Positions 1 to 48,529 of a stretch of 64,000 nucleotides of DNA are shown here, one piece after another. This stretch comes from Obrimoposthia wandeli. Its lineage: Eukaryota. Under the pieces are notes generated by a model, which saw only the letters and a program-made list of their open reading frames with translations, did no database searches and had not been told where the DNA came from. Each line of letters starts with the position of its first letter. Positions within the stretch are counted from its first letter, which is position 1. The position numbers were made by a program, and so were the translations under genes. The stretch lies in contig CDROCS010000953.1 in NCBI GenBank assembly GCA_977020255.1, positions 124,001-188,000 on the forward strand. Reading direction: 5' to 3'.

Positions 1-395
1 TATTTTACTGCTAAACCTGCTCAAATGTAAAAATGTTAGTCGTAAAGAAATTTTTATACTTCGTAAATATTTTTGTCGATACCTGCGAGTCTACACATAT
101 GTTTAATTGTCAGTAGGTACTGAAGTTATATGGTAGCCTTCAGTTGATAGTGAATCGTGCTGAACTATCAGTCGCCACTGATAAATTGGATTCTCGCTTG
201 TAATCGACTTAACTTTTCCTTGTAACTCGTCAAATAAGCCATTACATTCCTATTCATTTTTCAAGTGTTAACTGAACAACTTGAAGGTCGTATATTTTTT
301 GCACTTTAGAAAATTACGATTTGATTCTGTTTTAAATTTATAATAAAAAAAAAAATTTCAGATCAGTTACATATGTTGGGAAAATCTTAAATATA

Positions 396-3392
396 TGTTG
401 GGAAAATATTATAGCTATTTATTTTAAAAAAATAAAAATATAAATATATATATAAAAAATTTAAAAAAATAAAAAGTAAAAAAGAATTAATTAACTAAAG
501 AATTAATTAAGAACTTTCCTTAATTAGGGAAAAGTTCTATTTAGAAAATATGCACTTTGGCATTTTAATCTCAAGATAAATCAATCTCCGACGGGAAAAA
601 AGTCCGTTTCGCCCTGCCAGGCTCATCAGGGAGATGGCTTGTTATCTCTGACTTCGCGGTGGATTCCGCGAAGCCAGAGATAACAATAATAAAAAGCCAG
701 GGAAAAGAGGGAAAGATTCCCCCTTTCATGTGCCGACGAATATCGTCGACATATGATGTAGGTGTGCGCAAGTGCACATTTCAATACACACACTCACACA
801 GCAGACATCACTCAACTCATTCACTCTCACTACTCACTCTTACTACTCACTCAATCGCTCACTAAATCACTTATTCACCCACTCTCCCTACTCACTCACT
901 CCCCTATCCATTGTGCACATGTGTGTGAGTATGGGACAATAATAATTTAATAATTCTCTCTGCCAGATTTCTTACCGTGGTCTGAACAGCTGGTGTGTGT
1001 GCTGTTTTGGACTGGGCAACAGGCAGAGATTCTGCACAGGGGACTAGTCCAGTGTGTGTGTCCCCACAGCCGCAGCTGTCTCCCTCATTGCATATTGCGG
1101 TGTTTGTGTGCGCGGATGTGCCAATCTCGCGGTTCCTGCCGTCTCTCTATCTTATTTGACCGGTCCAACAATGTGACAATCTCTAGCGGTTGCTGTTTTC
1201 TTCTGCCCGCGTTGTATCAGTTGCTACCGACATTTGTGATTGCTATTGTTGGGGTTTCTATATGAAACTCTGTTCTAATATAGATCCTCTTTAGTGGAGG
1301 GCCCCAACGTGAGTTCTATAGAAGCAGGTCTTAGGGATGGTTGTGGCCTACTTAATGTTATGCTTGCCTGTCTCAATTTTTATCTGAAGGTTTTTTGTTG
1401 TGTCTTAATCTGAAGGGTTTAGAACGATGCTTTCTAGTTGTAGGAAATCGTTTATTTATTAACACACTAGACTAACACGAATCAAGTACGTATTTCTAAA
1501 AAGTTACAATAAAATTCCTAAGACTTCTGTAAGTCTCTACACAAGTGGGGATGATCCACGTATCGATTTTAATTTTAGGGTTGAAGGTTTAAAAAGTCTT
1601 TCTAGTATTTGGTGATTGCACAAAATCAAAACTTGCTCTAATTTATGTAAAAAAAAATTTCTAGTAAATTAACGATTACAAACTTGCTCTAAAACTTGCT
1701 CTAATTTATAGAGGCTTTCAATTCAAATTATATGATATCAAATTTTACGATACCAAATTTATATATTTATCAAATTGTACGATATCCAATTTATAAATTA
1801 CGGCTCAAAACTTTCAAAATCGACTTCCAAATTGCTATTTTAATCAAGTTATAAATTCTCCAAAATCGGCTTCACAATTACTTATTTAAAATCACGTTCT
1901 ACTTTTATTTCCGCGCTTGTTCCTTACCTGGCGTCCGGTCTATATTGGCCTCCTCAGATGTCGGTCGAATCCTTTACTCGGTACCCTTGACGTGCTGTGA
2001 TCGCACTGTACGGTTCTCGCTCTGGGTGATTCTGACGGTCTCTCCTCGCTTTTAGTTGTACTTCTTCTTTGTTTTCGCTTTTTGCTTCTCTTGATCTGGT
2101 TGCTCGGAATCTATCGCCGAGTTTTTCTTTAACAAATTGTCGCTCTTGATTGGGGTGCTCGGAATCTATCGCCGAGACTTACTTTAACAAATTGTCGCTC
2201 TTGATTTGGGTACTCGGAATCTATCGCCGAGACTTTCCTTAACAAATTTCCGCTCGGATTTAATCACGAGTCTTTCTGATTCCAACTTTCGGCAAAATAA
2301 TAACTGCTACTGCTAAATTTAATAATAATTTAGACTTATATAGTCTAAATTTCTCGTGGTGTGTCGCTGTCACTCGAATTTCCTTCCTTCTCTTCTTACG
2401 GTCCTGCAAGGCAATGATTAATCGATCTGATTACTAATCGACACTCACCCCACGAAACAGCTGTTGCTTCTATTTTCTTGTGTGTGTCTGCTAAATTCCA
2501 CTCTCGACCGAGATAAGCGACTGTGTGTCCGCGAGCAATAATCCTCTTGTCGGCTGGTGATTCACGATGGGCAGAGATTTCTGACAGTTGACCTTAATTG
2601 TGTGATGAATAATTCAATCAATTTCTAATATCACCTTACTTCCTGGGTGACTCACGATGATTCACTGTTGCTGCTGCGTCGCGAGATTTCTGACGTTTGA
2701 CCTTAATTCTTGTTGAATAATTCAGTCAATTGCTAATATTACCTTAATTCTTGTTCTTCTTCTATTTCTTAATTAATTTTTTGGTCCTTTTTAATTTAAC
2801 TTTAACTTCCTTATATACAACACATTGAACATGACCTTTCAAGGTCCTAAATATTTAATTTGCCTTTTACTCTCATCGATTTATTTTAACAATATAATTT
2901 TTTATTTAATTTATAACCTTACTTTCACGGATTTTATTTTGATATAAATTAGATTAATTATTTAAAATATATCAAATCCTAATCCTAACACTATAAATAG
3001 CAACCATGGAACAAATTATAGACACAAATAAATCAGAAATTGGAATTGTCAAATAAATCAGAAATTGGAATTGTCAAGTAAATCAGAAATTGGAATTGTC
3101 AAATTGAAACTTTATATATTTTGCACAAATATTATTATTGTTAAAGTAAATCAGAAATTGGAATTGTCAAATTGAAACTTTATATATTTTGCACAAATAT
3201 TATTATTGTTAAAGCAAATCAGAAATTGGAATTGTCAAATTGAAACTTTATATATTTTGCACAAATATTATTATTGTTAAAACAGATCAGAAATCAGAAA
3301 TTATCCTGTTGAAACTATAAATATTGAATAACCAAAATGTTTATGATTGAAATCTGAAATAAATATTATTTGTTGCTGTGGTCTTATTAACA
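396..3392 (+). repeat. 5' LTR of family A element (~1.25 kb), interrupted by a solo LTR at 1247..2990
   Basis: 396..1246 plus 2995..3392 aligns with the 3' LTR 15496..16733 and is nearly identical from ~625 onward. Confidence 0.95.
1247..2990. mobile_element. Solo LTR of a second family (B), inserted in the 5' LTR
   Basis: TGTTGGGG...CCTAACA termini, TSD CTAT (1243-1246 and 2991-2994); absent from the 3' LTR; internal ~50-bp tandem repeats. Confidence 0.92.
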
Positions 3393-3393
3393 T

Positions 3394-3407
3394 TGGTAAG
3401 CCCGACC
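3394..3407 (+). promoter_or_regulatory. Primer-binding-site-like sequence TGGTAAGCCCGACC
   Basis: Starts with TGG one base after the 5' LTR end; loosely resembles a tRNA-Trp-type PBS (TGGTGACCCCGAC); cognate tRNA not verified. Confidence 0.7.
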
Positions 3408-3464
3408 AAGGAACACGGTTAGTACTTAATTTTTCTTACTAATTTATTTCATATTTTATCTTAC

Positions 3465-3903
3465 ATAGTATCTTGTATTTTTGGACTATTTTGTCTTATA
3501 ATTAACTAGAATTTATAAACCTTAATTGTATTGTACTATAGTATCTTGTATTTTTGGACTATTTTGTCTTATAATTAACTAGAATTTATAAACCTTAATT
3601 GTATTGTACTATAGTATCTTGTATTTTTGGACTATTTTGTCTTATAATTAACTAGAATTTATAAACCCTAATTGTATTGTACTATAGTATCTTGTATTTT
3701 TGGACTATTTTGTCTTATAATTAACTAGAATTTATAAACCCTAATTGTATTGTACTATAGTATCTTGTATTTTTTGGACTATTTTGTCTTATATTTTAAC
3801 TAGAATTTATAAACCCTAATTGTATTGTACTATAGTATCTTGTACTTTTGGACTATTTTGTCTTATAGAACTTATAATTTACTAGAATTTATAAACCCTA
3901 ATT
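3465..3903 (+). repeat. 73-bp tandem array (~6 copies) in the element's 5' leader
   Basis: Unit ATAGTATCTTGTATTTTTGGAC... recurs at 3465, 3538, 3611, 3684, 3757 and 3832. Confidence 0.95.
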
Positions 3904-5187
3904 TTGTTCCAAAGTAAATATATAGATAATTTGGAGCATAATTTGTATCCTTCGTTTAATTTGATTTTAGTGAATATATTTAAAAAAATATATATATATA
4001 ATAATAGTTTTATTAAACATCTGTTTCATTTTGAGTAGCATTTTAATTTAACTGATAAATTTAGTTTTGAAAGGTTTTTCTTTTGTTTATATAAAACAAA
4101 TTTTGTTTATTTCAGGGGAAGTTATAGTATTTAGCACTTTGTTAATTTTTAAAACAGAAAGTATATTTTCTGTATTATATTTAAAATATATAGTGTTTTC
4201 ATACAATATTATACAATAAGTGTAGAATATAGTATAGGATTGGATATAGAAGACTGATTTTTCTAAGAATATTTAAAATTCTCGAATAAAATACGTTAGA
4301 CTAAATACTTTATTGAGTCCGATAGCAAATAAGTACTGTGAAGGAAAGTTGAAAATAACTTTAAGAAGGAGTTAATTGGTGCGTGAAATAGCTTAGAGGT
4401 AAAATTAACAAATTTTCATAGTTTTTTTTAAAGCAATAGTTTTTGATTCAAAATTATCCTGTGTTTGACTAAAATATATTAAATAATTTACCTTAACATA
4501 ATTTAAATTACTAAATTTACAATATTAGTTTTTTAAAAAAAAAAAATAATAATAATAAAAAAATTGCGATAGCAGATTTGACTTAAGGATATATATTGAT
4601 AGGTTAGAAATTTTTCTATTACTTTGGTTGGAATTACAGCTCAAATCACGGTAATCGATTATCATAAGGCCGAGCTGTATTTTGATCACAGAGCAGAGAT
4701 AATTCCTGACTGTTTTTAAAAATTCATTTATTTAAATAAAAAATTTTATTTAATCGTTTTCAATAAAACTAGACAACAATATATAAACACATAAATTAAT
4801 TTTCGACCCAGTACGCAGGATAATAGTGAACAATACACAAAGATTTCAAAATCTAAACGTAGTGCTAATCTTCACTGGAGACGCATTCAAACTAGATTAG
4901 TAAGAACTAACACAAGTGAAACACTACCACAGAGACCTAAATCCCAGATAAATTTTAGAACAAATAACGAATTTTTCCCTGAAACTCCGTTAGTTCACCA
5001 ACACACGGATCGCTTAATTTCAACCGACTCTGAAAACCAAAACCTAACATCAAATTCGGATACAGAAAGTTTATCCTTACCACAAACATCTGACTCAGAC
5101 AACTCGTCAGAAACATCAGAAACAGTGGCAGAACCAGTACCACCTAACATAGAAATAAATAACGAACAAATAAACGAAGTACCTCAA

Positions 5188-6642
5188 ATGGCAAATCATA
5201 GATTAAACATACCACTAGACGCATTTAATGGCGATAAATCATCTTTACCAGAATTCTTGAATAGATATGATTCTTTTGCTCAAGCATTCGAATGAACAGA
5301 CCTAGAAAAACTTAGAGTTTTTCCAGCATACCTAAAAGGCACTGCCCTAACCATTTATAGAGGACTAACAAATCTGCAAAAAGACACATGGGAACACTTA
5401 GTCCAACATTTCCAAAATATGGTTTTAGGAGCACAGGTCGACCAGAACTACTTAAATCAATTTAGACAACGAGAGCAACATGTAGGAGAACCCACAAATA
5501 TATTCGCAGTCGAATTACGACGACTTGCATTAAAATCTTTTCTCGAAATAGAAGAAGCACAAAGAGAACGATTACTTTTACATCAATTTTTACATGGATT
5601 AAATAACAAAATTAGAGATCACCCTGCATTACTAGAAGTAGAAAACTTTCAACAGGCTATAGGAAAAGCTCAGCTAGTAGAAGCAAGACTGAATATGATA
5701 CAGCAAACCGAAGTTTCAGCATTATCTTTTGAAAAAATAGAACGACCACAAACGCCACCAAACTACAACCAATCTAGGAATTTTAACCAAGATACTCAAT
5801 ATAATTTTCAAAATCCTCAACAATTTAGACCACCAATAAATAATTTTTATAGAAACCAGACAAATAGAAATTTTGCAAACTCACAATTTACACAAAGATC
5901 TTTTCAAAAATGCACAAATTGTGGACTCCAAAATCATACAATAGAAAATTGTCGAAAATTAAGTAACATAAAATTTTGCAGATTTTGCAAAAAAGACAAT
6001 CACACAATTGAAATTTGTAGAAAATTAATAAATAGACAGAGTAATAATACACTACCAAGGAATAATAACTTCAATAAACCAAACAATTTTGACAATAATC
6101 AAAATAGATATTTTAATAACGATACAAAATTTTGTAAGATTTGTAATATGAAAAATCACAACACCGATGACTGTGGAAAATTAAACACAATGATGAATCA
6201 ATTTGGAAACACAACAATAAAACAGCAACCACAAGTTCAAAAAACAGTACAATTCAGTACTCAAGATCGACAATATACCCCAAAAAACCCTATTCACACT
6301 ATAGAAAATACAGAAACAACTCCAAACACAGACGAATTAGCATTGTTAAAATTACGACTTAAAGAAATGGATAATCGCTACAGAGAAATACACCAACAAT
6401 GCCATAACAGTGAACCACAAACAGATAGAACAAACTTACAATCCGAATTTGGAGACATGTTTAGAGATGGTTGTTTGACATTACAAAAAAATAAATATAC
6501 AATCACAAAAACAAACCAAACTACTCAAACACAAGAAAAGAAAGTAAAACACAAGAAAAAACGTAAAACACTAAAAAATCTGAAAACTAAAATTTTTAAA
6601 AATACAAATAATCTTAATAAAATGATGAAAAAATTATGGAAA
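5188..6642 (+). pseudogene. gag: Gag (capsid-like region plus three CX2CX4HX4C zinc knuckles)
   Basis: Frame open from 4795, ATG at 5188; retrotransposon-gag-like helix pattern (EFLNRY...QAFE*TDLEKLRVFPAYLKGTA) with TGA at 5293 where Trp would fit; knuckles at 5911, 5977 and 6133. Confidence 0.88.
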
Positions 6643-8510
6643 ATTATTCATATAATATTAATAATATTTCTAATTATGAACATGATAAAACCAATTAATG
6701 CTTTAGAAGCATATGATTGTTCAAAATATAAAATTCAAAATAAATATTCTTTAATGGATTTACAGCAATGTGCAGACGCTGACCCAAATGAGGTAAAAAC
6801 CCAAAATACTAAGTTGTATCAAGTATATCAGGAAACAGATTTCATATATGAAGAAGTTTTCGAATGTAGATAACATGTAGAGACATTTATAACATATTGT
6901 GGACAACATAGTCACAATTCAATAGTAAAACCAGCATTAGGAAAAACACCAATAATAGTTGACGCTTTAAATTGTAAAGATGCTTTCGCAACAGGAGAAT
7001 TGAGAATAGATAGAGAAATTAAAGTCCGAGCGGCGAAAAATAAAATAATTCAACAAATGATATCAGTTGTAGGTACGAATTAATCTGATGGAGAATGTAC
7101 AACAGGAACTTATGTCGTAATGGGAGTTAAGCAAAGTGGTTTAGTAGTTATTAAAAATTTTGATGTCGAACTAAGAACTTTCAAAGCAACATTCGACCCT
7201 TCCACAAACACAATGGTAACAATGCCATTTTGTGAAGCAAACATAGGTCACTGTAACACAGGTTCTTCAATACTTTACTACAAAATAAAAATGGATCAAT
7301 GTAAATTAATACATTTAAAATCAGAAACTTTTCAAATAATTCAAGGAAAAAGATTTAGAGATGATCCGGAACTAGATCAACAAATTCCAAAGGACATACG
7401 CAAAAAATATAGAACTAGAAAAATACGAAAAACACCAACTCCAACTATATTAATGTCTATTGAACAAGGTTCAGGAATGCGATTTATTAAAAAGAAAGAG
7501 GAATCCCGATGTGGACACTCTGTTTATACAACTAATTATAAAGGAATATATTTAAGTAATGAAAAAATACATAATGCAAAAACGACACCAACTAAATTTG
7601 ATATTAAAAATTATGATTATTTTAACAATAAATTAGATTATTTTTATCACAAAGGACTAATGACAATAGAAGCAATATATAGAGAAACCATAATGAATGA
7701 TTGTAAATTAAATCAGGAAATATTAAAAAAGAAATTGGCAATTATTGCTACTTACCCAGAATTAATAACACCATTATTACCATTAGCTGACGGTACTTTT
7801 GGAAGAGTAATGGGAGAAGTGTTATACACTTATCAATGTAAAAAAGTAATAGTTAACATAAGAAATCACCAAAAATGTACAAAAGAATTACCAATTTCTT
7901 ACAAAAATAATTCATTATTTGTAGAACCAATCACTAGAATCATACTTTTTAACACATTTAGCATTAAAGAAATAAACTGCTCAAACATAATGGCACCTCA
8001 TTATCAAATTTCAAAAGATATTTGGATTTCACTTCCAAGAAGAGATATTGTCGCAGAACCACAAAAATTACAATTAACCACTCTCAGCAACGACATCAAT
8101 ATACAATCAGATAACGAATTAAACACAAAAGGAATTTATATACAGGAAGATATAGATAAGTTAAGAAAATAAATTTTATTTCCACAAATAAGATCCAGAA
8201 TTTTAACACAAATCATAGAAAGATCAGTACCTGACGGAATTAGCCGTCCCGATTACGATTTATTACTTTCTCCAAATCATTTTATAAAAGCCACTAAAAA
8301 CACTATGTCAAAAATATGGGGAAAATTTTTAATTTTTGGACAAGCATTTTCTGGATTAGTTGGAATATATGCTCTATTAATTTGCTTTAAGATTCTTCTA
8401 AGTCAAATTTTATCAACATATTATATTTATAAAGTTGGAGGATTAACATGGAAATTAATCTTAGGATGTTTCCCATTTTTGGCAAAATTCCTTATTTTTA
8501 ATCATCATCA
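6643..8510 (+). pseudogene. Chuvirus-like fusion glycoprotein (env) with internal signal peptide, in frame between Gag and protease
   Basis: Signal-like IIHIILIIFLIMNMIKPINA|LEAYDC; motifs AYDC, YCG-HS, DGEC, YFNNKLDY, DC-L...P, GEV--YQC--V-V-IR, C--ELPI, EP-TRI, GIY--ED---LR--ILFP and W-KF--FG--SG-VG-Y match the chuvirus-type G pattern as I recognise it; TAA stops at 6871, 7081 and 8170 do not change the frame. Confidence 0.8.
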
Positions 8511-8689
8511 AAACATAGTAAACACATTATCAAATGAAATGCGAGAAACAAATATACAAAAAATTACAAGTACCAAAGGAACAGAAAAAACGGAATCTTC
8601 ACAATATCCTGATTTAGAAAAATATATAGATAAAACAACTATACAAAAACCATCTGCACCAACAATATATACAATAAATCAAAAAGATA

Positions 8690-11600
8690 ACGACAAACGA
8701 CCATATGTAAAAGTAGAAATTAACGAATATAAACTTAAAGCTTTAATTGACACAGGATCAAGCGTAACAGTTTTAGACGAATCTTTCTTAAAAACACAAC
8801 AAAAATTACTTCTTCTTAAGGAAAATAGTCAAGTCACAGCAGCAAACGGTCAACCCGTAAATATAATAGGAAAATTAGACTGTCTTTTTAAAATAGGAAA
8901 TAAATTCATAAAAATACCTACAAGAATAATGAAAAATTGTCCTTGCCAAATGATCATAGGAATAGATACATTAAAAAAATTAGGAAATAATTTCCACTTT
9001 GATTTTGAAAAAAATCAAATAAAAGACATTTACAGACCTAACGCCAAAGATGAATACGAGTTAGAAATAAAAGGAGATATCATTCTCCAACCAAGAACAG
9101 AAACAATGTTACAACTAGAAACTAACATAATCACGGAAAAAGATGTATTATTTGAGCCTTATAAATATCAACAAGAAACCTTGAACTACGTTTTGCCAAA
9201 TATAATTTGTAAAATAAAGAACAACACAATACCAATCAGAATCCTAAATGCAGACATTAATGAAATTCATCTCAAGGAAGGAGTACGTCTTGGGAAAATA
9301 AGTGTTATTGAAAATATTGAATTAATAGATAATGAAAAAATAGAAGATAAATCTACGATAAATTTTAACGATATCAAATTAAATGATTATGAAAAATCAA
9401 AACTTAAAACTTTAACAGAAAAATATGATGTAATATTTGCTAAAAATGAATACGATTTAGGTCGAACAAATTTGATAAAACATAATCTTCCGTTAACAAC
9501 AAACACAGCAATAAAACAACGACCCTACCGAATTCCATATGCCTACAGAGATGAGGCTCAAAGACAAATAAAAGGAATGTTAGAAAATGAAATTGTTAGA
9601 AGAAGTTTTTCTGCATGGACATCATCTGTTGTTTTAGTAAAAAAGAAAGATGGTTCTTTGAGATTTTGCGTAGACTACAGAAAACTAAACGAAGTCACTC
9701 ACAAAGATACTTATCCACTGCCAAGAATTGATGAAATATTAGACAAACTAAAAAATGCACAAGTATTTACAACTTTAGATTTACAGAGTGGATACTGGCA
9801 AATAGAAATTGAGGAGTCAGATAAATATAAAACAGCTTTCTCAACAGGAGAAGGATTGTATGAATTCAATGTCTTACCATTTGGATTAACCGGAGCTCCA
9901 GCAACATTTCAGAGATGTATGAGCCATATTTTAATGGATGCAGATCACGTAATGGTATATATCGACGACATTCTTATTTTTTCAAAAAATTTGAAGAACA
10001 TTTAAAAGATTTAGAAAACGTATTCTTAAGATTACAGGTAGCAGGATTAAAACTAAAACCAAAGAAATGTGAATGGATAAAAGATAAAGTAAATTACTTA
10101 GGACATGCTGTATCAGCAAAAGGAATACAACCAGACGAGAGTAATGTAGAAAAGATTAAAAATTTTCCAATCCCAAAAACAGTAAAAAATATACAGGAAT
10201 TTTTAGGGCTTGCAGGATATTATCGTAGATTTATTAGAAATTTCGCACAAATAGCAATACCATTAAATAAACTTATTAAAAAAGATGAAAAATTTGAATG
10301 GGAAAAAGAACAACAAGAATCTTATGAATATTTAAAACAAAAATTAATCGAAAAACCTATACTTAGATATCCTAATTTTAATAACTCATTTTTAGTTATG
10401 ACTGACGCCAGTGGTTATGCGTTAGGAGCAGTTTTAGGACAACAGGAAAATAACGAAAAAGATCATGTGATAGCATATGCGAGCAGAGGTCTTAAAAAAC
10501 ATGAAAAGAATTACTCAACGATAGAAAGAGAATGCCTAGCTATTTGCTTCGCAATGGAACATTTTAAACATTACTTATTAGGTCGAAAGGTTTATGTTTA
10601 CACAGATCAAAGACCATTACAATGGCTTTTAAATCATAAGGATACAACATCTAGATTAATGAGATGGGCATTGATTTTACAAAAATATGATATTGAAATA
10701 AAATATCGAAAAGGAAAATCTAACGCTAATGCAGATTGTCTATCACGAATAAGAGAAGAAATAAACGAAATAACTGCAAACGACATCGAATTAAATCTTT
10801 TTACAATAATTCAAGCTAAATATGATGAAAAAGTAATTACTAAACTTCAAAGCAAAGATAATGAAATTCAGCAAATAACTAAATACATTAGCACAAACGA
10901 AGTACCAACAGATGAAAAATTAAGAAAACATTTAAAAATTCACGAATCACGATACAAATATAGTAATGAAATATTATATTATTTAAATGACAAAAATCTA
11001 TATTCACTAGTTATTCCTAAAGAAATTCAGTGTCAATTACTTCTTCAATATCATAATGGAGCCCTAGGAGGACATTTATCATCAAAAAAGACACATTCAC
11101 GATTAAATTTAAAATACTATTGGATTGACATGAAAGAAGATGTAAAAAATTGGTGTAAAACATGTGAAATATGTCTTAAACGGAAAAATACTTTACGTAC
11201 CACAAAAATACCTTTAAAACCAATACCTTATCCATCAGCCCCCATGGAAACTGTTGCCATGGATGTAATGGGACCATTACCTGAAACACCCCGAGGAAAT
11301 CGATATATAATAGTATTTTCTGATTATTTTACAAGATGGCCAGATACTTTTCCAACACATGATCATAAGGCTGAAACCATCGCAAAGGTTTTAGTCGAAA
11401 AAATTATTTTTACTTTCGGTGCACCCCGAAAATTATTTACCGACAAAGGTCCTGAATTTATAAATAATGTATTAGCGTCAATAGCTGAAATTTTTCACAT
11501 AAAAAAGATCAATACAACACCATATCACCCTCAAACTGACGGGTTAGTAGAAAGATTTAATAGAACCCTCGAAGATATGATGGCATCATACACAAACAAC

Positions 11601-12130
11601 AACCAAACAGATTGGGATTTACACATACCTCCATGCCTTTTTGCATATAGAACATCAGTACATGCATCCACAGGAGAAACACCTTTTTATCTTATGTTCC
11701 TCAGAGATCCTCAAATGCCTAATGACCTAACATTACTACAACCTACTACACAATATTTAGAAATACCTGAATATAAAATAGAAATTAGAGAAAGAATAAA
11801 ACTAGCATTCGAAAAAGCTAAACTATTTGTAAAAAACATACAAGAAAATTACAAAGAATATAATGATAGAAGAACTAAGCCATCAAATATAAAAAGCGGA
11901 AGTAAAGTGATGATTCACAATCCACAAATTAATGTAGGATTGTCTCACAAATTATCAAAACCATACAAAGGACCATATACAGTCATTAGTACCAACGGAA
12001 CCAACATAACAGCTAAACTAGATAATGAACCAAAATCAAAAGAAATAAGAGCACATATAAACAGATGTCGAGAAATACCTGAGGAGAATACAAAAGTAAA
12101 AAGTCACAAATATAACTTAAGATCAACTAA
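8690..12130 (+). pseudogene. pol: Pol: aspartic protease, RT, RNase H, integrase with GPY/F module; 1-nt deletion frameshift near 9990
   Basis: LIDTGS at 8743-8760; YIDD at 9958-9969; TDASGYALGAVL, TDQRPL and NANADCLSR (RNase H); H-H-C-C finger, AMDVMG, TDKGPEF and ERFNRTL (integrase); KPYKGPY; FSKN/FEEHL is broken by one missing T. Confidence 0.95.
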
Positions 12131-12245
12131 TGATAATACAGTTCTACAAATGTTGACAATAAAAAACTCACAAAAACAAAATAAAACTATTTTGAGTCAT
12201 CAAACCAGAAATACAATAAAAATATCAATAAAAGAAATTGGTAAA

Positions 12246-13423
12246 ATAACGATGTTATTGATAATATATTTTATAATAAAATATAACCTACTGAAAGTAA
12301 ACGCAACAAACATAAATGACAATCAATTAATCATACAACAACAAACAAATAAATACGACTCAACAACTCATCTCATAAAAAATTTTGGATTAATAACAAT
12401 AATACCTGAAATCACATCAATAAAGTTAAAAATTTCTCTTCTTACAAACAAAACAGGAAATGTGCAAATCACACAAACAGATAGAAAACAAAATATAATT
12501 ATTTCAGGAATAAAATCACAAAAATATACAATACCATTTTTAAGAACAGAAACACAATATAAAATAAGAATTAAGTCGAAATTAAAAAATATAACACTCT
12601 ATGAAAGAATTATAGAAACTCACATATACCTAGCATCAATATTAAAAACAACAGCAAATATATATCAAAACATAAAATAATAATAAAATGGGAATTTCAA
12701 CTAAAAATAGATGACTTAGATAAAGCCCTCATTAGAATTAGATATAGAAGACATAATGCTAATTTTTGGAAAGACTCAGAAAAACAATTAGAAAATACAC
12801 AAACTAAAACAAATTTAACCATAGAAAATATAAGATATCCAGAGAAAATAATAATGGACAATAGAGAATGCGTAATCACTAATAAACCAATAATGTACAG
12901 ACAATGGAGTCAAAAGTTTGAAAGTTATAAAAATCTAACAAAATTAACAATTTTAGGAAATAAGATATCCAAACTATATCAACCTACAATTTTTTGTGGT
13001 CGTTGGTCAGCAATAAAAATTAAGAAATATGTTAAAGAAATAACCACAAAACAAATGCTACATACCACAACATTTACATCAAAAATTTACAGAGTTACAA
13101 ATCAAGTTGAAATCACGGAGAGAATAAGAATTAAATTAAAATTAAAAACAACAGAAACAATATCCTATAAATCATTTAATGAAAGTTTAAAAATGCACTA
13201 TGGTAAACAAGAACATTCAAGGAATGAAGATAAAAAAGAACTTATAATAATAGTTATAGTAATCGAAATAATTACATTTTTAAATCAAATATCATGGAGA
13301 ATGTTAATTTTGAAACATACAAAAATGATAGAAACAAAACAACGAAAACACTTTTGTGGCCCCCCAGGCCCTTTTACTATTTATATTTTCCCAAGGATGA
13401 GAATTCTTCGGAATTATCCATAA
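12246..13423 (+). pseudogene. Putative type I membrane protein with FN3-like repeats, fused in frame after integrase (frameshift ~12625)
   Basis: Signal-like ITMLLIIYFIIKYNLLKVNA|T; FN3-like motifs KYTIPFLRTETQYKIRIKS and KIIIKWEF...IRIRYRRHNANFWK...TNLTIENI; hydrophobic LIIIVIVIEIITFL at ~13241; removing 2 nt from ATATA (12624-12628) joins the frames. Confidence 0.45.
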
Positions 13424-13660
13424 ATACTGTAATAGAAAATAGGAAAAGAAATATAACACAATAATCAATTTTTTTAAAAAATAAAACCATTTAAGTAACA
13501 AAAAATGTTAGTACTATTAAGTAAATCTAAATTAGTTAGGAAATAGAATAAAAATTTGATATATGTATATTTTAAAGAGGATTTAATGAAAATAATATTA
13601 AAATAAAATAACCAGGAAACGCATCCTGAAATTTAATAATGGTTATTTTTAGATATAAAA

Positions 13661-13957
13661 ATGAACAGATTGGCAAAAGTTTGTAAAAAATGCAAAAAAT
13701 TAGAGAAAAAGATTCGAGATGTTTCCAGACAGCATGACGACTTCTATATAAAGATCACAACTCAAAATAAATCACTGAAACAGTTAATAAAACAAAGTGT
13801 GGAAGAAAAATTGAATAATGATTTAACAATTGACGAACTAGAAGGGAGATTGACACATAGTTTTGGCAGAATAGACTATTTAATACAACAAACTTTAAGT
13901 CAACGATCAACTATAGCCTCATTAAGAAGACAAATGATGACCTTTGTTAAACTATAA
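13661..13957 (+). CDS. Accessory ORF, 98 aa, probably coiled-coil, unknown function
   Basis: Clean ATG-initiated ORF (AAAATG) inside the LTR boundaries, with heptad-like charged/hydrophobic pattern. Confidence 0.45.
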   Translation: MNRLAKVCKKCKKLEKKIRDVSRQHDDFYIKITTQNKSLKQLIKQSVEEKLNNDLTIDELEGRLTHSFGRIDYLIQQTLSQRSTIASLRRQMMTFVKL

Positions 13958-14117
13958 CCATACATCCTTCTTTTGTACAAATTGTCTAACTTTTATTAAT
14001 AGATTTATTTTCATGACAAATCCCACATACTGCATGGATAAGACTGATATTTTTATAACTTTAAGACTGTGAAATAATTATATTATTTTATTCAACTAAC
14101 AAATTGATTAAAGCAGA

Positions 14118-14381
14118 ATGGATAACAATCACCTGGATACGACTCCAGACCAGCTCACTCGGTTAGATCAAACAAAAAGCACAGCAAAAATAGAAAGAGG
14201 AAAAACGGAAAATATGCCAGAAAGGTGGTATTTAGCAAAATTCCTGTATCAAAAGATGCGTCAGTTTAGCATTGCATACTTTAGAAACAACGGAGGAAGA
14301 AAAATGTTTTCAAATCAAACATTTCTTCCTAATAAGTTAAAAATTACCACAGAGGAAAGAACAAGCGCACTTATATTTTAA
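14118..14381 (+). CDS. Accessory ORF, 87 aa, unknown function; possibly a frameshifted N-terminus of the exonuclease
   Basis: ATG-initiated ORF; overlaps the upstream open frame (from 14336) of the exonuclease ORF. Confidence 0.35.
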   Translation: MDNNHLDTTPDQLTRLDQTKSTAKIERGKTENMPERWYLAKFLYQKMRQFSIAYFRNNGGRKMFSNQTFLPNKLKITTEERTSALIF

Positions 14382-14401
14382 ATGAAAAAAGACCAACCCA
14401 T

Positions 14402-15286
14402 ATGGCTCTCAGCGAAATATTCCCCATTAATAATAGTGAAAAAATAGATATTCACGTGGCACTAGGAGTGGCCCATTTAAAAACCAAATCAGATAAGACC
14501 TTAAACTTTCTGATGATAGGAAATCATACCTACACCTTACAAGCAGCACAATTAGAAAATCAATATAGCATAAAAATAGGAAGAGGACCAAATCTATTAT
14601 TTATAGAAAAAATAAGAAAAGCAGAAGAACCTCAACAAATAGCCCTTTTTGAATTAAAAAACGCACAGAAACCAGCAATTTTATTCCTCGATTGCGAAAT
14701 GGTGATATCAGTAGATAAACAGCCAGTTTTAGCAAGTGTTTCTATTATAAATTACATAGGTAACGTAATTATAGATACACTGTGCGTAACTAGAGACAGA
14801 GTAAGAAATTACGTTACTAGAATAACTGGACTGTCAGATAGAAAGTTACAAGGATGTAGAGATGCTGATGAAGTAATTGAGGAAGTAAAAAACATTGTGT
14901 ATGGTAACATCATCGTAGGTGTGGGACTAACAAACGATTTAAAAGCTTTACGCCTACAGAAATGGATGTTATTCAACATTGTTGATTTAGGAATATCTAA
15001 AAGCATAAAATCAGAACTAAATCACAATCACCCAAATATTGGACTTGCCAACATGGTGCGGAAATACTTAAATATAGAAACACAAAAAGGAGTCCACACT
15101 AGCATGGAAGATGCAAATCACACCCGAAAAATTTTCATAATGAAGGAGGAAATGTTGAATAGAGAGTTTGATTTGACCGAGGTGATGAATCCACCATCTA
15201 GCGAGAACAACCCCAGTTCATCGTTCTCACATAAGACCGGAAACTCGGAGTCCGGTACACAAAACTCCCCGATTTTGTTGGATTAA
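14402..15286 (+). CDS. DEDDh 3'-5' exonuclease, REX4/ISG20-like, carried inside the retrotransposon
   Basis: ExoI LDCEMV, LASVSII, RNYVTRITGL, ExoII VG--LTNDLKAL and ExoIII QKGVHTSMEDA; all D-E-D-H-D catalytic positions present; uninterrupted 294-aa ORF. Confidence 0.9.
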   Translation: MALSEIFPINNSEKIDIHVALGVAHLKTKSDKTLNFLMIGNHTYTLQAAQLENQYSIKIGRGPNLLFIEKIRKAEEPQQIALFELKNAQKPAILFLDCEMVISVDKQPVLASVSIINYIGNVIIDTLCVTRDRVRNYVTRITGLSDRKLQGCRDADEVIEEVKNIVYGNIIVGVGLTNDLKALRLQKWMLFNIVDLGISKSIKSELNHNHPNIGLANMVRKYLNIETQKGVHTSMEDANHTRKIFIMKEEMLNREFDLTEVMNPPSSENNPSSSFSHKTGNSESGTQNSPILLD

Positions 15287-15488
15287 GGTAGTATTGTTAT
15301 TATTTTATTCTGTTTTCATTCTTGTCTAAATTTTTAACGATATTTAACCAGACATGATTGTGATTAATAAAACATTAATCAGTTATAACATACAAACAAC
15401 ACTAGGTAACAATAGAAACAAGACAAAATAGTTTTACTAATAATTAAGATAAAAATTATAATTCTGAGGACAGAGACTTTTATGACCC

Positions 15489-15494
15489 GGAGGA
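15489..15494 (+). promoter_or_regulatory. Short polypurine-tract candidate (GGAGGA)
   Basis: Purine run ending 1 nt before the 3' LTR start; short, so only positional support. Confidence 0.4.
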
Positions 15495-15495
15495 T

Positions 15496-16733
15496 TGTTG
15501 GGAAAATATATTAGCTATTTGTTTAAAAAAGAAAAATAAAAATATAAAAATTAAAAAAAAAAAAAATAAAAGGTAAAAAGGAATTAATTAACTGAAAATT
15601 AATTGGGAACTTTCCTTAATTAGGGAAAAGTTCTGATTTTAAAATGTGCACTTTGGCATTTTGTCTAATCAATCTCCGACGGGAAAAAAGCCCGTTTCGC
15701 CCTTCCGGGCTCATCAGGGAGATGGCTTGTTATCTCTGACTTCGCGGTGGATTCCGCGAAGCCAGAGATAACAATAATAAAAAGCCAGGGAAAAGAGGGA
15801 AAGATTCCCCCTTTCATGTGCCGACGAATATCGTCGACATATGATGTAGGTGTGCGCAAGTGCACATTTCAATACACACACTCACACAGCAGACATCACT
15901 CAACTCATTCACTCTCACTACTCACTCTTACTACTCACTCAATCGCTCACTAAATCACTTATTCACCCACTCTCCCTACTCACTCACTCCCCTATCCATT
16001 GTGCACATGTGTGTGAGTATGGGACAATAATAATTTAATAATTCTCTCTGCCCAGATTTCTTACCGTGGTCTGAACAGCTGGTGTGTGTGCTGTTTTGGA
16101 CTGGGCAACAGGCAGAGATTCTGCACAGGGGACTAGTCCAGTGTGTGTGTCCCCACAGCCGCAGCTGTCTCCCTCATTGCATATTGCGGTGTTTGTGTGC
16201 GCGGATGTGCCAATCTCGCGGTCCCTGCCGTCTCTCTATCTTATTTGACCGGTCCAACAATGTGACAATCTCTAGCGGTTGCTGTTTTCTTCTGCCCGCG
16301 TTGTATCAGTTGCTACCGACATTTGTGATTGCTATAAATAGCAACCATGGAACAAATTATAGACACAAATAAATCAGAAATTGGAATTGTCAAATAAATC
16401 AGAAATTGGAATTGTCAAGTAAATCAGAAATTGGAATTGTCAAATTGAAACTTTATATATTTTGCACAAATATTATTATTGTTAAAGTAAATCAGAAATT
16501 GGAATTGTCAAATTGAAACTTTATATATTTTGCACAAATATTATTATTGTTAAAGCAAATCAGAAATTGGAATTGTCAAATTGAAACTTTATATATTTTG
16601 CACAAATATTATTATTGTTAAAACAGATCAGAAATCAGAAATTATCCTGTTGAAACTATAAATATTGAATAACCAAAATGTTTATGATTGAAATCTGAAA
16701 TAAATATTATTTGTTGCTGTGGTCTTATTAACA
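15496..16733 (+). repeat. 3' LTR of family A element
   Basis: Direct repeat of the 5' LTR, TG...CA, followed by the TSD TATA; contains 25-bp x3 and 68-bp x3 tandem units near its 3' end. Confidence 0.95.
16331..16340 (+). promoter_or_regulatory. Putative LTR TATA box (CTATAAATAG); counterpart at 2991..3000
   Basis: TATAAATA consensus followed ~35 nt later by AATAAA-containing repeats, as expected near the U3/R boundary. Confidence 0.5.
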
Positions 16734-16737
16734 TATA

Positions 16738-17668
16738 TATGAAAAAATAAAAGATATAAAATTAAGAAAAAATGGGAATTAATTAATTAATGAATTAATT
16801 AAGAACTTTCCTTAATTAGGGAAAAGTTCTGATTAAATAAAATATGCACTTTGGCTATTTGGTTTGGAGTGCTATTTCGCCCTGCTGGGCTCTTCAGAGA
16901 GATGGCTTGTCTTTGACTTCACTGTGGATTCCGCGAAGCCAGAGATAACAATGATAGACAGTGAAAAGAAGGAAAGATTTCTCCCTTTTAATATGCCGAC
17001 GAATATCGTCGACATGTGATGTTGGTGTGCGCAAGTGCACAATTCAACACACACACACAACAGAAATTGCATACACCTACTCACTCACTAGTACTCAAAT
17101 CTTTCTAACTCACTGCTCATTCACTATGGTTGGAGTATATGTCTGTATGTGTGTGAGATTAATATATTATTTATCTCTGCCCAGATACGCTGCCTCAGTG
17201 TGTTTACGTGCCGGGGATCGACTGGTGCAGAGACTAAATGCATGGATTTCCGGCCTGTTAATTGGCACTGATTTATTATTTTTTCTGTATAAAAACAAAT
17301 CGCCATTACAAAAATTCAGAACCAAAAAAATTATTACTAAATTAATCTGAATCGCAGTTATATTTAGAGACAGTATCGCAAATTATTATTTGAAAGCAGA
17401 ATTTACAATTTAAATTGATATACCAGTTATATTTGGAGACAGAATTTACAAAATTTACAATTTATATTTGAAAGCAAAATTTATAATTTATATTTGAAAG
17501 CAGAATTTACGATATAAATTTGAAAACAGAATTTACATTTATATTTGAAAAAATCGCAAATTATTATTTGAAAGCAGAATTTACAATTTAAATTGATATA
17601 CCAAGAATATATTATTTGTCCACAAAGTTTTTGTTATTGTTTAGGTAGATATACCCTAACTTAATACA
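16738..17668 (+). mobile_element. Older diverged family-A LTR, split by the full-length element (its first 22 nt are at 374..395)
   Basis: 374 TGTTGGGAAAAT start; 16738 onward shares the AGAACTTTCCTTAATTAGGGAAAAGTTCT palindrome and GGATTCCGCGAAGCCAGAGATAACAA; probable end TAATACA at 17668 with flanks CATA/TATA (1 mismatch). Confidence 0.75.
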
Positions 17669-22620: not shown

Positions 22621-22971
22621 GTACCAGGTATCAACGTACCATTTTCTCACATGGGTTTTCTCATTAGTTCCATTATAATTGCCGGAATTGTGCATGAAAT
22701 GGGCCACGCCATTGCCGCAATCAAAGAAGGAGTTCGAGTTGACGGCTTTGGACTGATTTTCTTTGTTGTCTATCCGGGCGCTTTCACTAACATCAACACT
22801 GGGGATCTGGAGAGTCTGGATCCAACCCGGAAATTGAGGATATTCTCAGCAGGCAACTGGCACAATTTTGTCACCCTCGTTATTGGGTTTGGTCTCCTGA
22901 ATGTGTTGCCTGTTCTGTTACTGCCATTCTACTCTACAGGGAATGGAGTTCTTGTCAACTACCTCAGTCAG
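22621..22971 (+). CDS. MBTPS2: Site-2 protease exon 2 (HEXXH)
   Basis: Acceptor CAG at 22620; VPGINVP, VHEMGH, YPGAF, LRIFSAGNWHNF and LLPFY are S2P motifs; donor GT at 22972. Confidence 0.92.
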
Positions 22972-47893: not shown

Positions 47894-48529
47894 AAAGTAT
47901 AAAAAACATGAAATTTCATGCAGGATTAAATCAAAGCAGTTGGCGTTTCTATTCTGTTCGCGTCAGATGAACTTGCAAAAAATAACCGCATAAGAGCTAT
48001 CGATAGATATCATTTTCTATTTTATTTCTACGTTTGGAGTGCAAGCATTTGAGTCGAGATCTTTACAGTAATATGAGTATATTGTCTATTACTAAAAGTT
48101 TTGATACCATTGTAAGCCTTTAAGCAATCTGAAAGTATAATCGAGCCCGGTGCGATTGAACTGCGCATGTATTCGTGTACTGTTTTCTTGGAACTGTAAA
48201 AAGAAAAACCTCACGATTTTAACGGTATATGCCACCAAAAACACGTTGTTCTTCAACCATTCTCTATTGCATTTCCAACGTGTAAGTACAGATTCAACAT
48301 TCTATATGTGCATATTTTAACCTCAAATTATCACGGGATTGTTCAAAATCTTCTCTACACATACCTCACGTAGACAATTGTTCCAATTTACAGTTGTACA
48401 GTAGGGTGCATCAAAAAAATTAAAGTTCTGAAATTGATCTGTCTGGTGATTAATTTTGTTTCACTTGGTGACAGATATTTTGTATTAAAATATTTTCATA
48501 ATTGAAGAATATTTAGAGGTCCCCCCATG

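What the first reader, a model, noticed from the sequence alone, without database searches (positions are those of the whole stretch)
14402..15286. Intact ISG20/REX4-like DEDDh exonuclease carried inside an LTR retrotransposon
Seen: an intronless, uninterrupted 294-aa ORF on the sense strand ends 210 nt before the 3' LTR, retains all catalytic residues and has an extra ~110-aa N-terminal region. It is undamaged whereas gag, env and pol carry lesions. Known: RTs lack 3'-5' proofreading. Viral DEDDh nucleases proofread (coronavirus nsp14) or destroy immunostimulatory dsRNA (arenavirus NP), and ISG20 is a host antiviral nuclease. Inference: candidate roles are small-RNA or dsRNA counter-defence, primer or cDNA end trimming, or proofreading for a large retro-genome.
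Basis: partly seen in the sequence, partly recalled or inferred. Interest (0 to 1): 0.88.

Follow-up and report, generated by a model that had tools for sequence, protein, structure and literature searches.

The report
Retroelement lineage carrying an ISG20-like exonuclease
The ORF is the catalytic part of an RNA-trimming nuclease gene (the REXO4/ISG20 type) that a whole deep lineage of giant, envelope-bearing retrovirus-like elements of invertebrates carries after pol and keeps under selection, although the copy in this window is itself a decayed one.

Summary
The 294-aa ORF (14402-15286, +) is real. It ends 209 nt before a genuine 3' LTR and keeps the full DEDDh pentad (D97, E99, D179, H232, D237). 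Sequence and predicted fold place it in the REX4/ISG20 subfamily. It is not a one-off capture: 13 elements with informative context (the window plus 12 environmental contigs) have a homologous gene directly after pol on the same strand. These exonucleases form a clade separate from cellular REXO4 (200/200 bootstraps). They co-diverge with pol (Mantel r=0.86, p=0.004). They keep the pentad in 34 of 36 copies and show dN/dS of 0.08-0.15. The backbone is a giant Ty3/gypsy element with a class III fusion glycoprotein between gag and pol. That layout has been published, but without any mention of an exonuclease. The gene therefore carries one frame break, a lesion density like that of gag-env-pol. 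Function is inferred only. It is most likely an accessory 3'-5' exoribonuclease acting on RNA 3' ends, possibly against host small-RNA defence. I rate it a new variant of a known kind, the precedent being DEDDy exonucleases in rotifer retroelements.

The parts
392..395 (.). Target-site duplication, 5' copy (TATA); 3' copy at 16734-16737
   Evidence: Sequence read directly. It is low-complexity, so weak on its own, but a 4-bp duplication fits the 4-bp duplication of the nested solo LTR.
396..3392 (+). 5' LTR (TG..CA), interrupted by a nested insertion
   Evidence: BLASTN: 396-1246 matches 15496-16335 (32 mismatches in 839 aligned bases), and 2991-3393 matches 16332-16734 (identical).
1247..2990 (+). 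Nested solo LTR of another element inside the 5' LTR (not part of the element proper)
   Evidence: TG..CA ends, a 4-bp duplication CTAT, and the empty site preserved in the 3' LTR. Its first ~100 nt recur three times elsewhere in the window.
3394..3407 (+). Primer-binding site (TGGTAAGCCCGACC), one base after the 5' LTR
   Evidence: Sequence read directly. The tRNA was not identified.
3392..3904 (+). 73-bp tandem repeats at the start of the long leader (3393-5205)
   Evidence: the repeat finder family D2.
5206..12680 (+). Broken gag-env-PR-RT-RH-IN polyprotein gene. Outer bounds of the domains: env (class III fusion glycoprotein) ~6700-8610, PR ~8692-8988, RT ~9637-10109, RNase H ~10299-10688, IN ~11013-11588.
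   Evidence: Pfam hits on the ORFs as they stand.
12681..14117 (+). Spacer between pol and the exonuclease gene, with two ORFs (189 and 98 aa) of no recognisable family
   Evidence: No Pfam family above cut-off. No homolog in the sister loci. No match to the exonuclease N-terminal profile.
14118..15286 (+). Exonuclease gene of the element: an N-terminal module plus a REX4/ISG20-type DEDDh domain, broken by one frame change in the non-catalytic N-terminal part. The finding's ORF is the downstream piece.
14678..15187 (+). Catalytic DEDDh domain (ORF residues 93-262; D97, E99, D179, H232, D237)
   Evidence: pLDDT above 90 throughout. Foldseek finds ISG20 with target TM-score 0.85 and rmsd 2.4 A. 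The clade profile hits ISG20L2 at E=4.7e-30.
15489..15494 (+). Short polypurine tract (GGAGGA) next to the 3' LTR; a second purine-rich run lies at 15466-15477
   Evidence: Sequence read directly.
15496..16733 (+). 3' LTR (TG..CA)

Best explanation
The ORF is the catalytic three-quarters of an accessory gene of about 390 codons that belongs to the retroelement lineage itself.

Shown:
- The element is a large Ty3/gypsy-type (Metaviridae) LTR element. A class III, chuvirus/gB-like fusion glycoprotein lies between gag and protease, and the order is PR-RT-RH-IN.
- Its last gene, between pol and the 3' LTR, encodes a soluble protein with a beta-rich N-terminal module of unknown kind and a REX4/ISG20-type DEDDh 3'-5' exonuclease domain.
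- The same gene follows pol in every sister element with informative context.
- These genes form one clade apart from cellular REXO4 and co-diverge with pol. They keep the catalytic pentad and evolve under strong purifying selection.
- The gene was therefore most likely taken once, long ago, from a cellular REXO4/ISG20-like gene and has since served the element.
- The copy in this window is an old, dead insertion: about 2.6% LTR divergence, a nested solo LTR, three to four stops, one frameshift in gag-env-pol and one frame break in the exonuclease gene. It is a fossil of that lineage, not a preserved or domesticated gene.

Inferred:
- The gene is always a separate ORF 33-960 nt or more after pol, in the slot where other errantivirus-like elements carry env. 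It is probably translated from its own, probably spliced, subgenomic mRNA as a free protein.
- Its two-metal DEDDh site removes nucleotides from RNA 3' ends, as ISG20, ISG20L2, REXO4 and SDN1 do.
- The most likely target class is RNA that the host uses against the element: small silencing RNAs, or double-stranded or tagged element RNA. I put about 0.35 on this sub-claim.
- A role in the element's own replication comes next; see the rival explanations.
For: Identity:
- Pfam RNase_T, 31.4 bits against a cut-off of 24.
- PDB phmmer: ISG20 2.4e-9 and ISG20L2 5.3e-9.
- Clade profile: ISG20L2 4.7e-30, ISG20 2.2e-24, SDN1 1.4e-18.
- AlphaFold model with pLDDT above 90 over residues 93-262, and Foldseek target TM-score 0.85 to ISG20.
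- Named sequence neighbours are 'RNA exonuclease 4' of fungi, an alga, tapeworms and krill.

Element: LTRs, PBS, PPT and target duplication and domain content.

Lineage-wide presence: exonuclease after pol on the same strand in L001 (N-terminus only, E=2e-23), L002, L003, L005, L008/L009, L010, L011, L012, L013, L015, L019/L020 and L021. No locus with at least 5 kb of upstream sequence lacks pol.

Tested prediction: three further members of the clade, picked from the tree alone, all proved to lie behind a glycoprotein-PR-RT-RH-IN polyprotein.

Separate clade: a 21-member split, 200/200 NJ bootstraps, excluding all named REXO4.

Co-divergence with pol: Mantel r=0.855, exact p=0.004, 7 elements.

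Selection:
- dN/dS of 0.08-0.15 in six pairs; the best-conditioned pair has dN 0.115, dS 0.747.
- Pentad intact in 34 of 36 distinct copies; the other two are contig-truncated fragments.

Decay of this copy.
Against: - No activity, transcript or substrate has been observed. Every functional statement is inference from family membership.
- Only the window shows the gene between two LTRs. No sister locus reaches both LTRs.
- Four of the six dN/dS pairs have saturated dS (about 2), and all six come from one metagenome.
- The tree is a distance tree on 169 columns and does not resolve the cellular donor.
- Hosts are unidentified.
- The window's sub-lineage (with P0121 and P0123) departs from the clade majority at 6-8 of 27-28 highly conserved columns, so its enzyme may differ in detail.
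- The two frameshifts in the window could be assembly indel errors. The stops could not.
Confidence: 0.8

Rival explanations
1. Replication helper acting on DNA or hybrids. The nuclease trims mis-incorporated or non-templated 3' nucleotides of nascent cDNA (proofreading), or cleans cDNA ends, which lets these unusually large retro-genomes be copied faithfully.
For: - Members of the clade are very large for Ty3/gypsy: polyproteins of 2694 to at least 4057 aa plus further ORFs, and 12.1 kb between the LTRs in the window.
- The DnaQ fold is the fold of proofreading subunits, which also appear among the weaker structural matches.
Against: - The best sequence and structure relatives are RNases (ISG20, ISG20L2, REXO4, SDN1, PAN2), not proofreading subunits.
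- The gene is never fused to RT and lies 33 nt to about 5 kb away from pol.
- From general knowledge, other LTR elements of similar or larger size manage without a nuclease.
Confidence: 0.17
2. Processing of the element's own RNA. The nuclease matures or protects the 3' end of the genomic or subgenomic RNA, or trims the tRNA primer, as was suggested for the DEDDy ORFs of rotifer elements.
For: - REXO4 and ISG20L2 are RNA 3'-end processing enzymes (molecule names).
- The same idea was put forward for DEDDy ORF3 in PMC5408684 and PMC6431247.
Against: - No conserved RNA structure or target was looked for or seen.
- Nearly all LTR elements do without such an enzyme.
Confidence: 0.15
3. One-off transduction. 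A host REXO4-like retrogene was picked up by this single copy and has no role for the element.
For: No second copy exists in the window, and no exact copy of the protein is on record.
Against: - Thirteen elements with pol only 50-79% identical share the gene in the same place.
- The clade is separate from cellular REXO4 in 200/200 bootstraps.
- The gene co-diverges with pol.
- dN/dS is 0.08-0.15.
Confidence: 0.01
4. Host domestication. This particular copy's nuclease ORF is kept open because the host now uses it.
For: The catalytic domain is open and complete while neighbouring genes have stops.
Against: - The gene has a frame break that removes part of a folded N-terminal module.
- Lesion density is the same as in gag-env-pol: 0.86 against 0.67 per kb.
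- With about 1.3% change per LTR, an 885-nt ORF stays open by chance more often than not (my estimate).
Confidence: 0.03

Closest known systems
Cellular REX4/ISG20 subfamily of DEDDh exonucleases (REXO4, ISG20, ISG20L2; more distantly SDN1 and PAN2)
   Same: - Same fold and the same five catalytic residues with H-x4-D.
- Best sequence, profile and structure matches.
- The named neighbours are REXO4.
   Different: - Forms its own clade with 100% bootstrap support.
- Encoded by a retroelement.
- Carries a beta-rich N-terminal module with no counterpart in Pfam or the PDB.
- About 25-35% identity to cellular members.
DEDDy (RNase D-like) ORF3 of bdelloid rotifer Juno and Vesta LTR retrotransposons and of Athena/Terminon elements (Rodriguez, Kenefick and Arkhipova 2017, PMC5408684)
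   Same: - A DnaQ-superfamily 3'-5' exonuclease encoded as a separate ORF after pol in LTR retroelements.
- No transmembrane or coiled-coil region.
- Function unknown, with RNA 3'-end processing proposed.
   Different: - That protein is DEDDy and groups with RNase D, WRN and Rrp6. This one is DEDDh and groups with REXO4/ISG20.
- The retroelement backbone is different: Juno and Vesta there, a GAG-ENV-POL clade here.
- The rotifer paper found no clear departure from neutrality. Here dN/dS is 0.08-0.15.
GAG-ENV-POL Ty3/gypsy 'errantiviruses' with gB-type class III envelope in Nematoda, Bryozoa and Platyhelminthes (eLife 2026, PMC13524379, citing Sacco et al. 2022)
   Same: A Ty3/gypsy pol, a chuvirus/gB-like glycoprotein placed between gag and pol, and invertebrate hosts.
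   Different: - That work took the pol stop codon as the end of the coding region and has no occurrence of the word exonuclease.
Small-RNA nucleases SDN1 (plants) and ERI-1 (nematodes)
   Same: - DEDDh enzymes.
- SDN1 is the third-best solved relative.
- From general knowledge, both act on 3' ends of small silencing RNAs. That makes them the functional model for the counter-defence reading.
   Different: - They are host genes.
- ERI-1 did not come back as a hit.
- The likeness in function is an inference, not a result.
Nidovirus nsp14 ExoN and arenavirus NP exonuclease
   Same: Virus-encoded DEDDh nucleases captured from cells; see bioRxiv 10.1101/2021.02.01.429129.
   Different: - Neither is among the 50 listed viral structure matches.
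- Those are domains of larger replication or nucleocapsid proteins. This one is a stand-alone ORF of a reverse-transcribing element.

Membership tests
DEDDh (DnaQ-H) exonucleases, REX4/ISG20 subfamily | Exo I motif D-x-E | tested here: met
   D97 and E99 align to ISG20 D11 and E13. They are present in every relative whose sequence covers the column: 145 of 147 hits, the other two being gapped there, and 35 of 36 clade copies.
DEDDh (DnaQ-H) exonucleases, REX4/ISG20 subfamily | Exo II acidic residue | tested here: met
   D179. The column reads D in 141 and E in 6 of 147 hits.
DEDDh (DnaQ-H) exonucleases, REX4/ISG20 subfamily | Exo III motif H-x4-D (His, not Tyr) | tested here: met
   H232 and D237. 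Both columns are invariant in all 147 hits.
DEDDh (DnaQ-H) exonucleases, REX4/ISG20 subfamily | Profile match above the curated threshold and the RNase H-like alpha/beta fold | tested here: met
   PF00929 scores 31.4 bits against a cut-off of 24. The Foldseek target TM-score is 0.85 to ISG20 and 0.84 to ISG20L2.
DEDDh (DnaQ-H) exonucleases, REX4/ISG20 subfamily | Closer to REX4/ISG20 than to other DEDDh groups (ERI1, TREX, RNase T, Orn, epsilon) | tested here: met
   The ranking runs ISG20L2 and ISG20, then SDN1, then PAN2, well ahead of epsilon, TREX and RNase T. The named hits are REXO4.
DEDDh (DnaQ-H) exonucleases, REX4/ISG20 subfamily | Orthology with cellular REXO4 (falls inside the cellular group) | tested here: not met
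   The retroelement sequences form a separate 21-member split in 200/200 bootstraps. It is a paralogous, element-borne branch.
DEDDh (DnaQ-H) exonucleases, REX4/ISG20 subfamily | Mg2+-dependent 3'-5' exonuclease activity on RNA | not testable with these tools
   Inferred from the conserved residues only.
Ty3/gypsy (Metaviridae) LTR retroelement, GAG-ENV-POL type | Direct LTRs with TG..CA, target duplication, PBS and PPT | tested here: met
   The TATA duplication is low-complexity.
Ty3/gypsy (Metaviridae) LTR retroelement, GAG-ENV-POL type | pol order PR-RT-RH-IN with gypsy-type RT_RNaseH and Integrase_H2C2 | tested here: met
   Pfam hits. There are 5656 pol relatives at E<=1e-20.
Ty3/gypsy (Metaviridae) LTR retroelement, GAG-ENV-POL type | Class III fusion glycoprotein gene between gag and pol | tested here: met
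   PF24664 scores 1.8e-38 in the window and up to 2.1e-97 in the sister polyproteins.
Ty3/gypsy (Metaviridae) LTR retroelement, GAG-ENV-POL type | Membership of one of the published GAG-ENV-POL clades | not testable with these tools
   The published sequences and supplements are not held.
Rotifer Juno/Vesta/Athena DEDDy ORF3 | DEDDy motif (Tyr in Exo III) and affinity to RNase D, WRN and Rrp6 | tested here: not met
   The window has H-x4-D. The DEDDy-type Pfam model PF01612 scores lower than RNase_T (24.1 against 31.4 bits). No RNase D or WRN structure is among the listed structural matches.
Rotifer Juno/Vesta/Athena DEDDy ORF3 | Separate ORF after pol in an LTR retroelement | tested here: met
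Nidovirus nsp14 / arenavirus NP exonucleases | Detectable structural or sequence kinship, and fusion to a replicase or nucleoprotein | tested here: not met
   Neither is among the 50 listed BFVD matches. The gene is a stand-alone ORF.

The most novel reading that the evidence does not exclude
A deep clade of giant, envelope-bearing metaviruses of invertebrates has turned a cellular REXO4/ISG20-type nuclease, the same family that vertebrates use as an interferon-induced antiviral enzyme, into a conserved viral accessory gene. The enzyme would disarm the host's RNA-based defence by trimming or destroying small silencing RNAs or double-stranded element RNA. That would be the first nuclease-type silencing suppressor known from a reverse-transcribing element. 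The alternative novel reading, that it supplies a proofreading-like function which permits 12-15 kb retro-genomes, is not excluded either.
Probability: 0.3. Interest if true: 0.85.

Novelty: new variant of a known kind. Interest (0 to 1): 0.66.

Why it matters
Reverse-transcribing elements are thought to need only gag, pol and sometimes env. Conserved extra enzymes are rare and each has been informative (dUTPase, chromodomain, the rotifer DEDDy and GDSL ORFs).

This study shows a second, independent recruitment of a DnaQ-fold nuclease. It comes from a different branch (DEDDh, REXO4/ISG20), sits in a different retroelement backbone and carries clear signs of long-term purifying selection. That makes 'a 3'-5' exonuclease helps some retroelements' a recurring theme that can be tested by comparison.

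It also shows that published surveys of GAG-ENV-POL elements, which stop at the pol stop codon, probably miss a conserved gene.

Finally, the kinship to ISG20, a host antiviral nuclease, raises the question of who captured the enzyme from whom, and for which side of the conflict it works.

Tried and rejected
- **Word-indexed protein searches.** The search with the ORF found nothing. With the clade profile it found only four proteins. The exhaustive HMMER search was needed.
- **Exact look-up of the protein.** Not on record.
- **Troyka lineage.** Rejected, because Troyka has CG..CG termini and 3-bp duplications.
- **Other scans.** The IMG/VR viral contigs hold no relative. There are no Rfam families and no tRNA genes in the window.
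- **dN/dS between the window's copy and its nearest relative.** Not attempted, because 37% amino-acid identity is far beyond saturation. I measured it on closer sister pairs instead.
- **Copy-specific decay of the catalytic domain.** Not seen. The window departs from the clade at 8 of 27 conserved columns, and its uninterrupted nearest relatives depart just as much (8 of 28 and 6 of 28).
- **LTR pairs in the sister loci.** None is reached by the fetched DNA.
- **N-terminal module.** No Pfam or PDB counterpart.
- **Sacco et al. 2022.** Not held in the library.
Full report
**1. The observation**

The ORF listing gives an uninterrupted 294-aa ORF at 14402..15286 on the + strand. Pfam places residues 95-245 in RNase_T (PF00929, 31.4 bits, cut-off 24). 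phmmer against the PDB gives ISG20 (2.4e-9), ISG20L2 (5.3e-9) and SDN1 (2.4e-5). The printed alignment puts D97 and E99 on the D-x-E of ISG20, D179 on its Exo II aspartate, and H232 and D237 on its H-x4-D. In an alignment of 147 relatives these columns are D, E, D (E in 6), H and D wherever the sequences cover them.

The LTRs are real:
- 396-1246 matches 15496-16335, and 2991-3393 matches 16332-16734.
- A 1744-bp insertion lies between the two halves of the 5' LTR.
- The ends are TG..CA, and the flanks carry TATA on both sides.
- A TGG-type primer-binding site starts one base after the 5' LTR.
- A short purine run abuts the 3' LTR.

The ORF's stop codon ends 209 nt before the 3' LTR.

**2. The element**

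The ORFs as they stand carry four recognisable units:
- a Monjiviricetes-type (class III) fusion glycoprotein (PF24664, 1.8e-38);
- an aspartic protease;
- RT, gypsy-type RNase H and integrase, in the order PR-RT-RH-IN;
- the glycoprotein placed upstream of the protease, not after pol.

Compared with the uninterrupted polyproteins of sister elements, the window's gag-env-pol stretch (outer bounds 5206-12680) has three to four in-frame stops and one frameshift. One of the stops may be a native gag terminator, because some sister elements also have a separate gag ORF. The two LTRs differ by 32 substitutions in the first 839 aligned bases and by none in the last 403, about 2.6% overall. The insertion in the 5' LTR is a solo LTR of another element, with its own TG..CA ends and a 4-bp duplication. 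This is an old, dead copy.

**3. The nuclease gene in this copy is not intact**

The three nearest relatives (P0121, P0123, P0124) are 358-420 aa long and align to the window's ORF only from about their residue 103-114 onward. Their extra N-terminal stretch contains an invariant motif (alignment A1). That motif and its surroundings are present in the window, but in a short ORF that starts at 14118 and lies in another reading frame:
- BLASTP gives E=3e-7 to P0123 and 4e-5 to P0121.
- A profile of the clade's N-terminal regions gives E=2.5e-6, while the two other ORFs of the spacer do not match.

The gene is therefore 14118-15286 with one frame break in its non-catalytic part.

A model of the intact relative P0121 (pLDDT 81, pTM 0.77) shows a structured N-terminal module from about residue 42 to 186. 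About 60 structured residues of it lie upstream of the point that corresponds to the window ORF's first codon.

One lesion in 1.17 kb (0.86 per kb) is no better than four to five in 7.5 kb (0.67 per kb). With about 1.3% change per LTR, an 885-nt ORF would stay open by chance more often than not (my estimate). Both frameshifts could in principle be assembly indel errors. That cannot be settled from one window.

**4. The gene belongs to the lineage**

The word-indexed search found nothing. The exhaustive HMMER search found 2029 relatives, and the best were unnamed proteins on environmental contigs. Their contexts, and those of the nearest pol relatives (48-54% identity), show the following:
- **L002:** gag, glycoprotein and PR in one ORF of at least 1615 aa, then pol, then a 539-aa ORF with the nuclease domain.
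- **L003:** the end of pol, then the nuclease 33 nt later.
- **L005:** a 4057-aa glycoprotein-PR-RT-RH-IN ORF, then the nuclease.
- **L008 and L009:** a 2871-aa gag-glycoprotein-PR-RT-RH-IN ORF, then the nuclease.

A distance tree of 66 sequences put all eight retroelement-linked nucleases in one 21-member split. It was recovered in 200 of 200 bootstraps and excludes every protein named REXO4. That made a prediction: the other members should also sit behind such polyproteins. The three I could look up did (L010, L011, L012).

A scan of JGI metagenome contigs added 18 loci:
- Every locus with at least 5 kb of upstream sequence has pol upstream on the same strand (L013, L016, L019, L021, L028), and L015 has the end of pol directly upstream.
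- In L019, about 5 kb lies between the recognisable pol domains and the nuclease. It holds an ankyrin-repeat extension and a 486-aa ORF.
- L001 has the closest pol to the window's. Its ORF after pol is cut by the contig end, and that ORF matches the N-terminal regions of clade nucleases at E=2e-23.

In all, 13 elements have the gene after pol, with no exception among the informative loci. The limitation is that no sister locus reaches both LTRs.

**5. History and selection**

Across seven elements, pairwise identity of the nuclease tracks that of pol (Mantel r=0.855, exact permutation p=0.004). Two groups of three elements stand out. The window's element is a third, deep branch, with pol 50-55% and nuclease 29-34% identical to all the others. 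That fits one old acquisition followed by co-divergence, with the nuclease evolving faster than pol.

Among four sister copies from one metagenome, dN/dS over the whole ORF is 0.08-0.15. The best-conditioned pair has dN 0.115 and dS 0.747. The other pairs have saturated dS, so their ratios are approximate.

The pentad is complete in 34 of 36 distinct copies. The two exceptions are fragments cut by contig ends. Six copies have Glu in place of the Exo II Asp.

The window's copy departs from the clade majority at 8 of 27 highly conserved columns. Its uninterrupted nearest relatives depart as often (8 of 28, 6 of 28), so this is a trait of the sub-lineage and not decay.

**6. What kind of nuclease**

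- The AlphaFold model of the window's ORF has pLDDT above 90 over residues 93-262.
- Foldseek finds ISG20 (target TM-score 0.85, rmsd 2.4 A) and ISG20L2 (0.84). PAN2 and SDN1 follow, and the proofreading subunits, TREX and RNase T come well behind.
- The clade profile gives ISG20L2 4.7e-30, ISG20 2.2e-24, SDN1 1.4e-18 and PAN2 about 1e-10.
- The named cellular neighbours are 'RNA exonuclease 4' of Cryptococcus, Pneumocystis, Chloropicon, two tapeworms and krill.
- The viral structure library returns giant-virus and phage DnaQ-type proteins. No coronavirus, arenavirus or retroviral protein is among the 50 listed matches.
- The N-terminal module has no counterpart.

**7. Mechanism**

Shown: a stand-alone, soluble, catalytically complete REX4/ISG20-type gene, kept by selection as the last large ORF of a retroelement lineage.

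Inferred:
- It is always a separate ORF in the slot that env occupies in GAG-POL-ENV elements, so it is probably expressed from its own subgenomic mRNA.
- As in its characterised relatives, it should shorten RNA from the 3' end.
- I rank the targets as follows: host defence RNAs, meaning small silencing RNAs or double-stranded or tagged element RNA (about 0.35); cDNA or hybrid ends, including proofreading (about 0.17); the element's own RNA or primer ends (about 0.15).
- Proofreading ranks low because the relatives are RNases and the gene is never joined to RT. The large size of these elements is its only support.

**8. Comparison with what is known**

The backbone is published. Ty3/gypsy elements with a chuvirus/gB-like class III envelope arranged GAG-ENV-POL are described for Nematoda, Bryozoa and Platyhelminthes. 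That study took the pol stop codon as the end of the coding region and never mentions an exonuclease (PMC13524379).

An exonuclease as an extra ORF of LTR retroelements is also published. However, it is DEDDy, RNase D-like, in the rotifer Juno and Vesta elements and in Athena/Terminon elements, with no clear departure from neutrality (PMC5408684, PMC6431247, PMC6338049).

Searches for DEDDh, DnaQ-like or exonuclease together with retrotransposon found no report of a REXO4/ISG20-type gene in a retroelement. The library lacks most subscription journals, so this absence is not proof. I therefore call it a new variant of a known kind.

**9. Verdict**

The interesting object is not this decayed copy. 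It is the lineage the copy reveals: giant envelope-bearing metaviruses with a conserved ISG20-like nuclease gene. Interest 0.66.

**10. Slips**

In one search a script line joined the two 5' LTR pieces in a variable that was never used, printed or saved. In one search, and in my notes, coordinates were printed that bracket the frame break of the nuclease gene. The consensus lines that the alignment tool printed were not used.

Noticed in passing
L005, L008, L010, L011, L012, L013 (whole loci): Sister elements encode gag (in some), a class III fusion glycoprotein, PR, RT, RNase H and IN as one uninterrupted ORF of 2694 to at least 4057 aa. An envelope glycoprotein is thus embedded inside the polyprotein. 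How it would reach the membrane is unclear.
   Followed up: partly
L019:4095-8743; L001:8281-10035: Ankyrin repeats occur inside the C-terminal extension of pol (L019) and in a protease-containing ORF (L001). An extra 486-aa ORF of no known family lies between pol and the nuclease in L019.
   Followed up: partly
L008:11684-11950, L002:~11007-11219, L011:11430-11699, L012:~11421-11684: A small ORF of about 88 aa just after the nuclease gene is conserved between sister elements (50% and 38% identity). No counterpart exists in the window.
   Followed up: partly
window 1247-2990; also 47793-47894, 50804-50897, 61623-61694: A nested solo LTR (TG..CA, duplication CTAT) interrupts the 5' LTR. It starts with the same heptamer as the host element's LTR, and its first ~100 nt recur three times elsewhere in the window.
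   Followed up: partly
window 396-3392 versus 15496-16733: LTR divergence is very uneven: 32 mismatches in the first 839 aligned bases and none in the last 403. Under a uniform rate this is improbable, about 3e-5 by my estimate. Gene conversion or an assembly effect could explain it.
   Followed up: no
window 371-395 and 16726-17063: Both flanks of the element resemble its own LTR: a 14-mer like the LTR start lies ~23 nt upstream, and ~85% identity to LTR positions 439-801 lies downstream. The element seems to have inserted into an older, diverged LTR of the same family.
   Followed up: partly
window 3392-3904 and 2923-3358 / 16264-16699: 73-bp tandem repeats lie at the start of the 1.8-kb leader, and 68-bp tandem repeats lie inside each LTR.
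   Followed up: no
window 12681-14117: The 1.4-kb spacer between pol and the nuclease gene holds two ORFs (189 aa; 98 aa, weakly coiled-coil-like). They have no homolog in any sister locus and no family assignment. In sister elements the gap is mostly 33-361 nt, 960 nt in L012.
   Followed up: partly
window 22651-23118: An ORF with a Peptidase_M50 (site-2 protease) match (4.2e-14), presumably an exon of a host gene. It could serve to identify the host.
   Followed up: no
L010:13643-21007; L011:13763-14464: The sister element in L010 lies next to a Maverick/Polinton-like unit (DNA_pol_B_2 plus rve). L011 is flanked by ORFs with prolyl-4-hydroxylase alpha N-terminal domains, an animal-type gene.
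   Followed up: no
P0002: A Ty3/gypsy pol 51% identical to the window's is labelled in NCBI as a protein of a 'MAG: Turicibacter sp.'. This is most likely eukaryotic contamination of a bacterial metagenome bin.
   Followed up: no
The ORFs that the ORF listing reports across it are artefacts.
   Followed up: no
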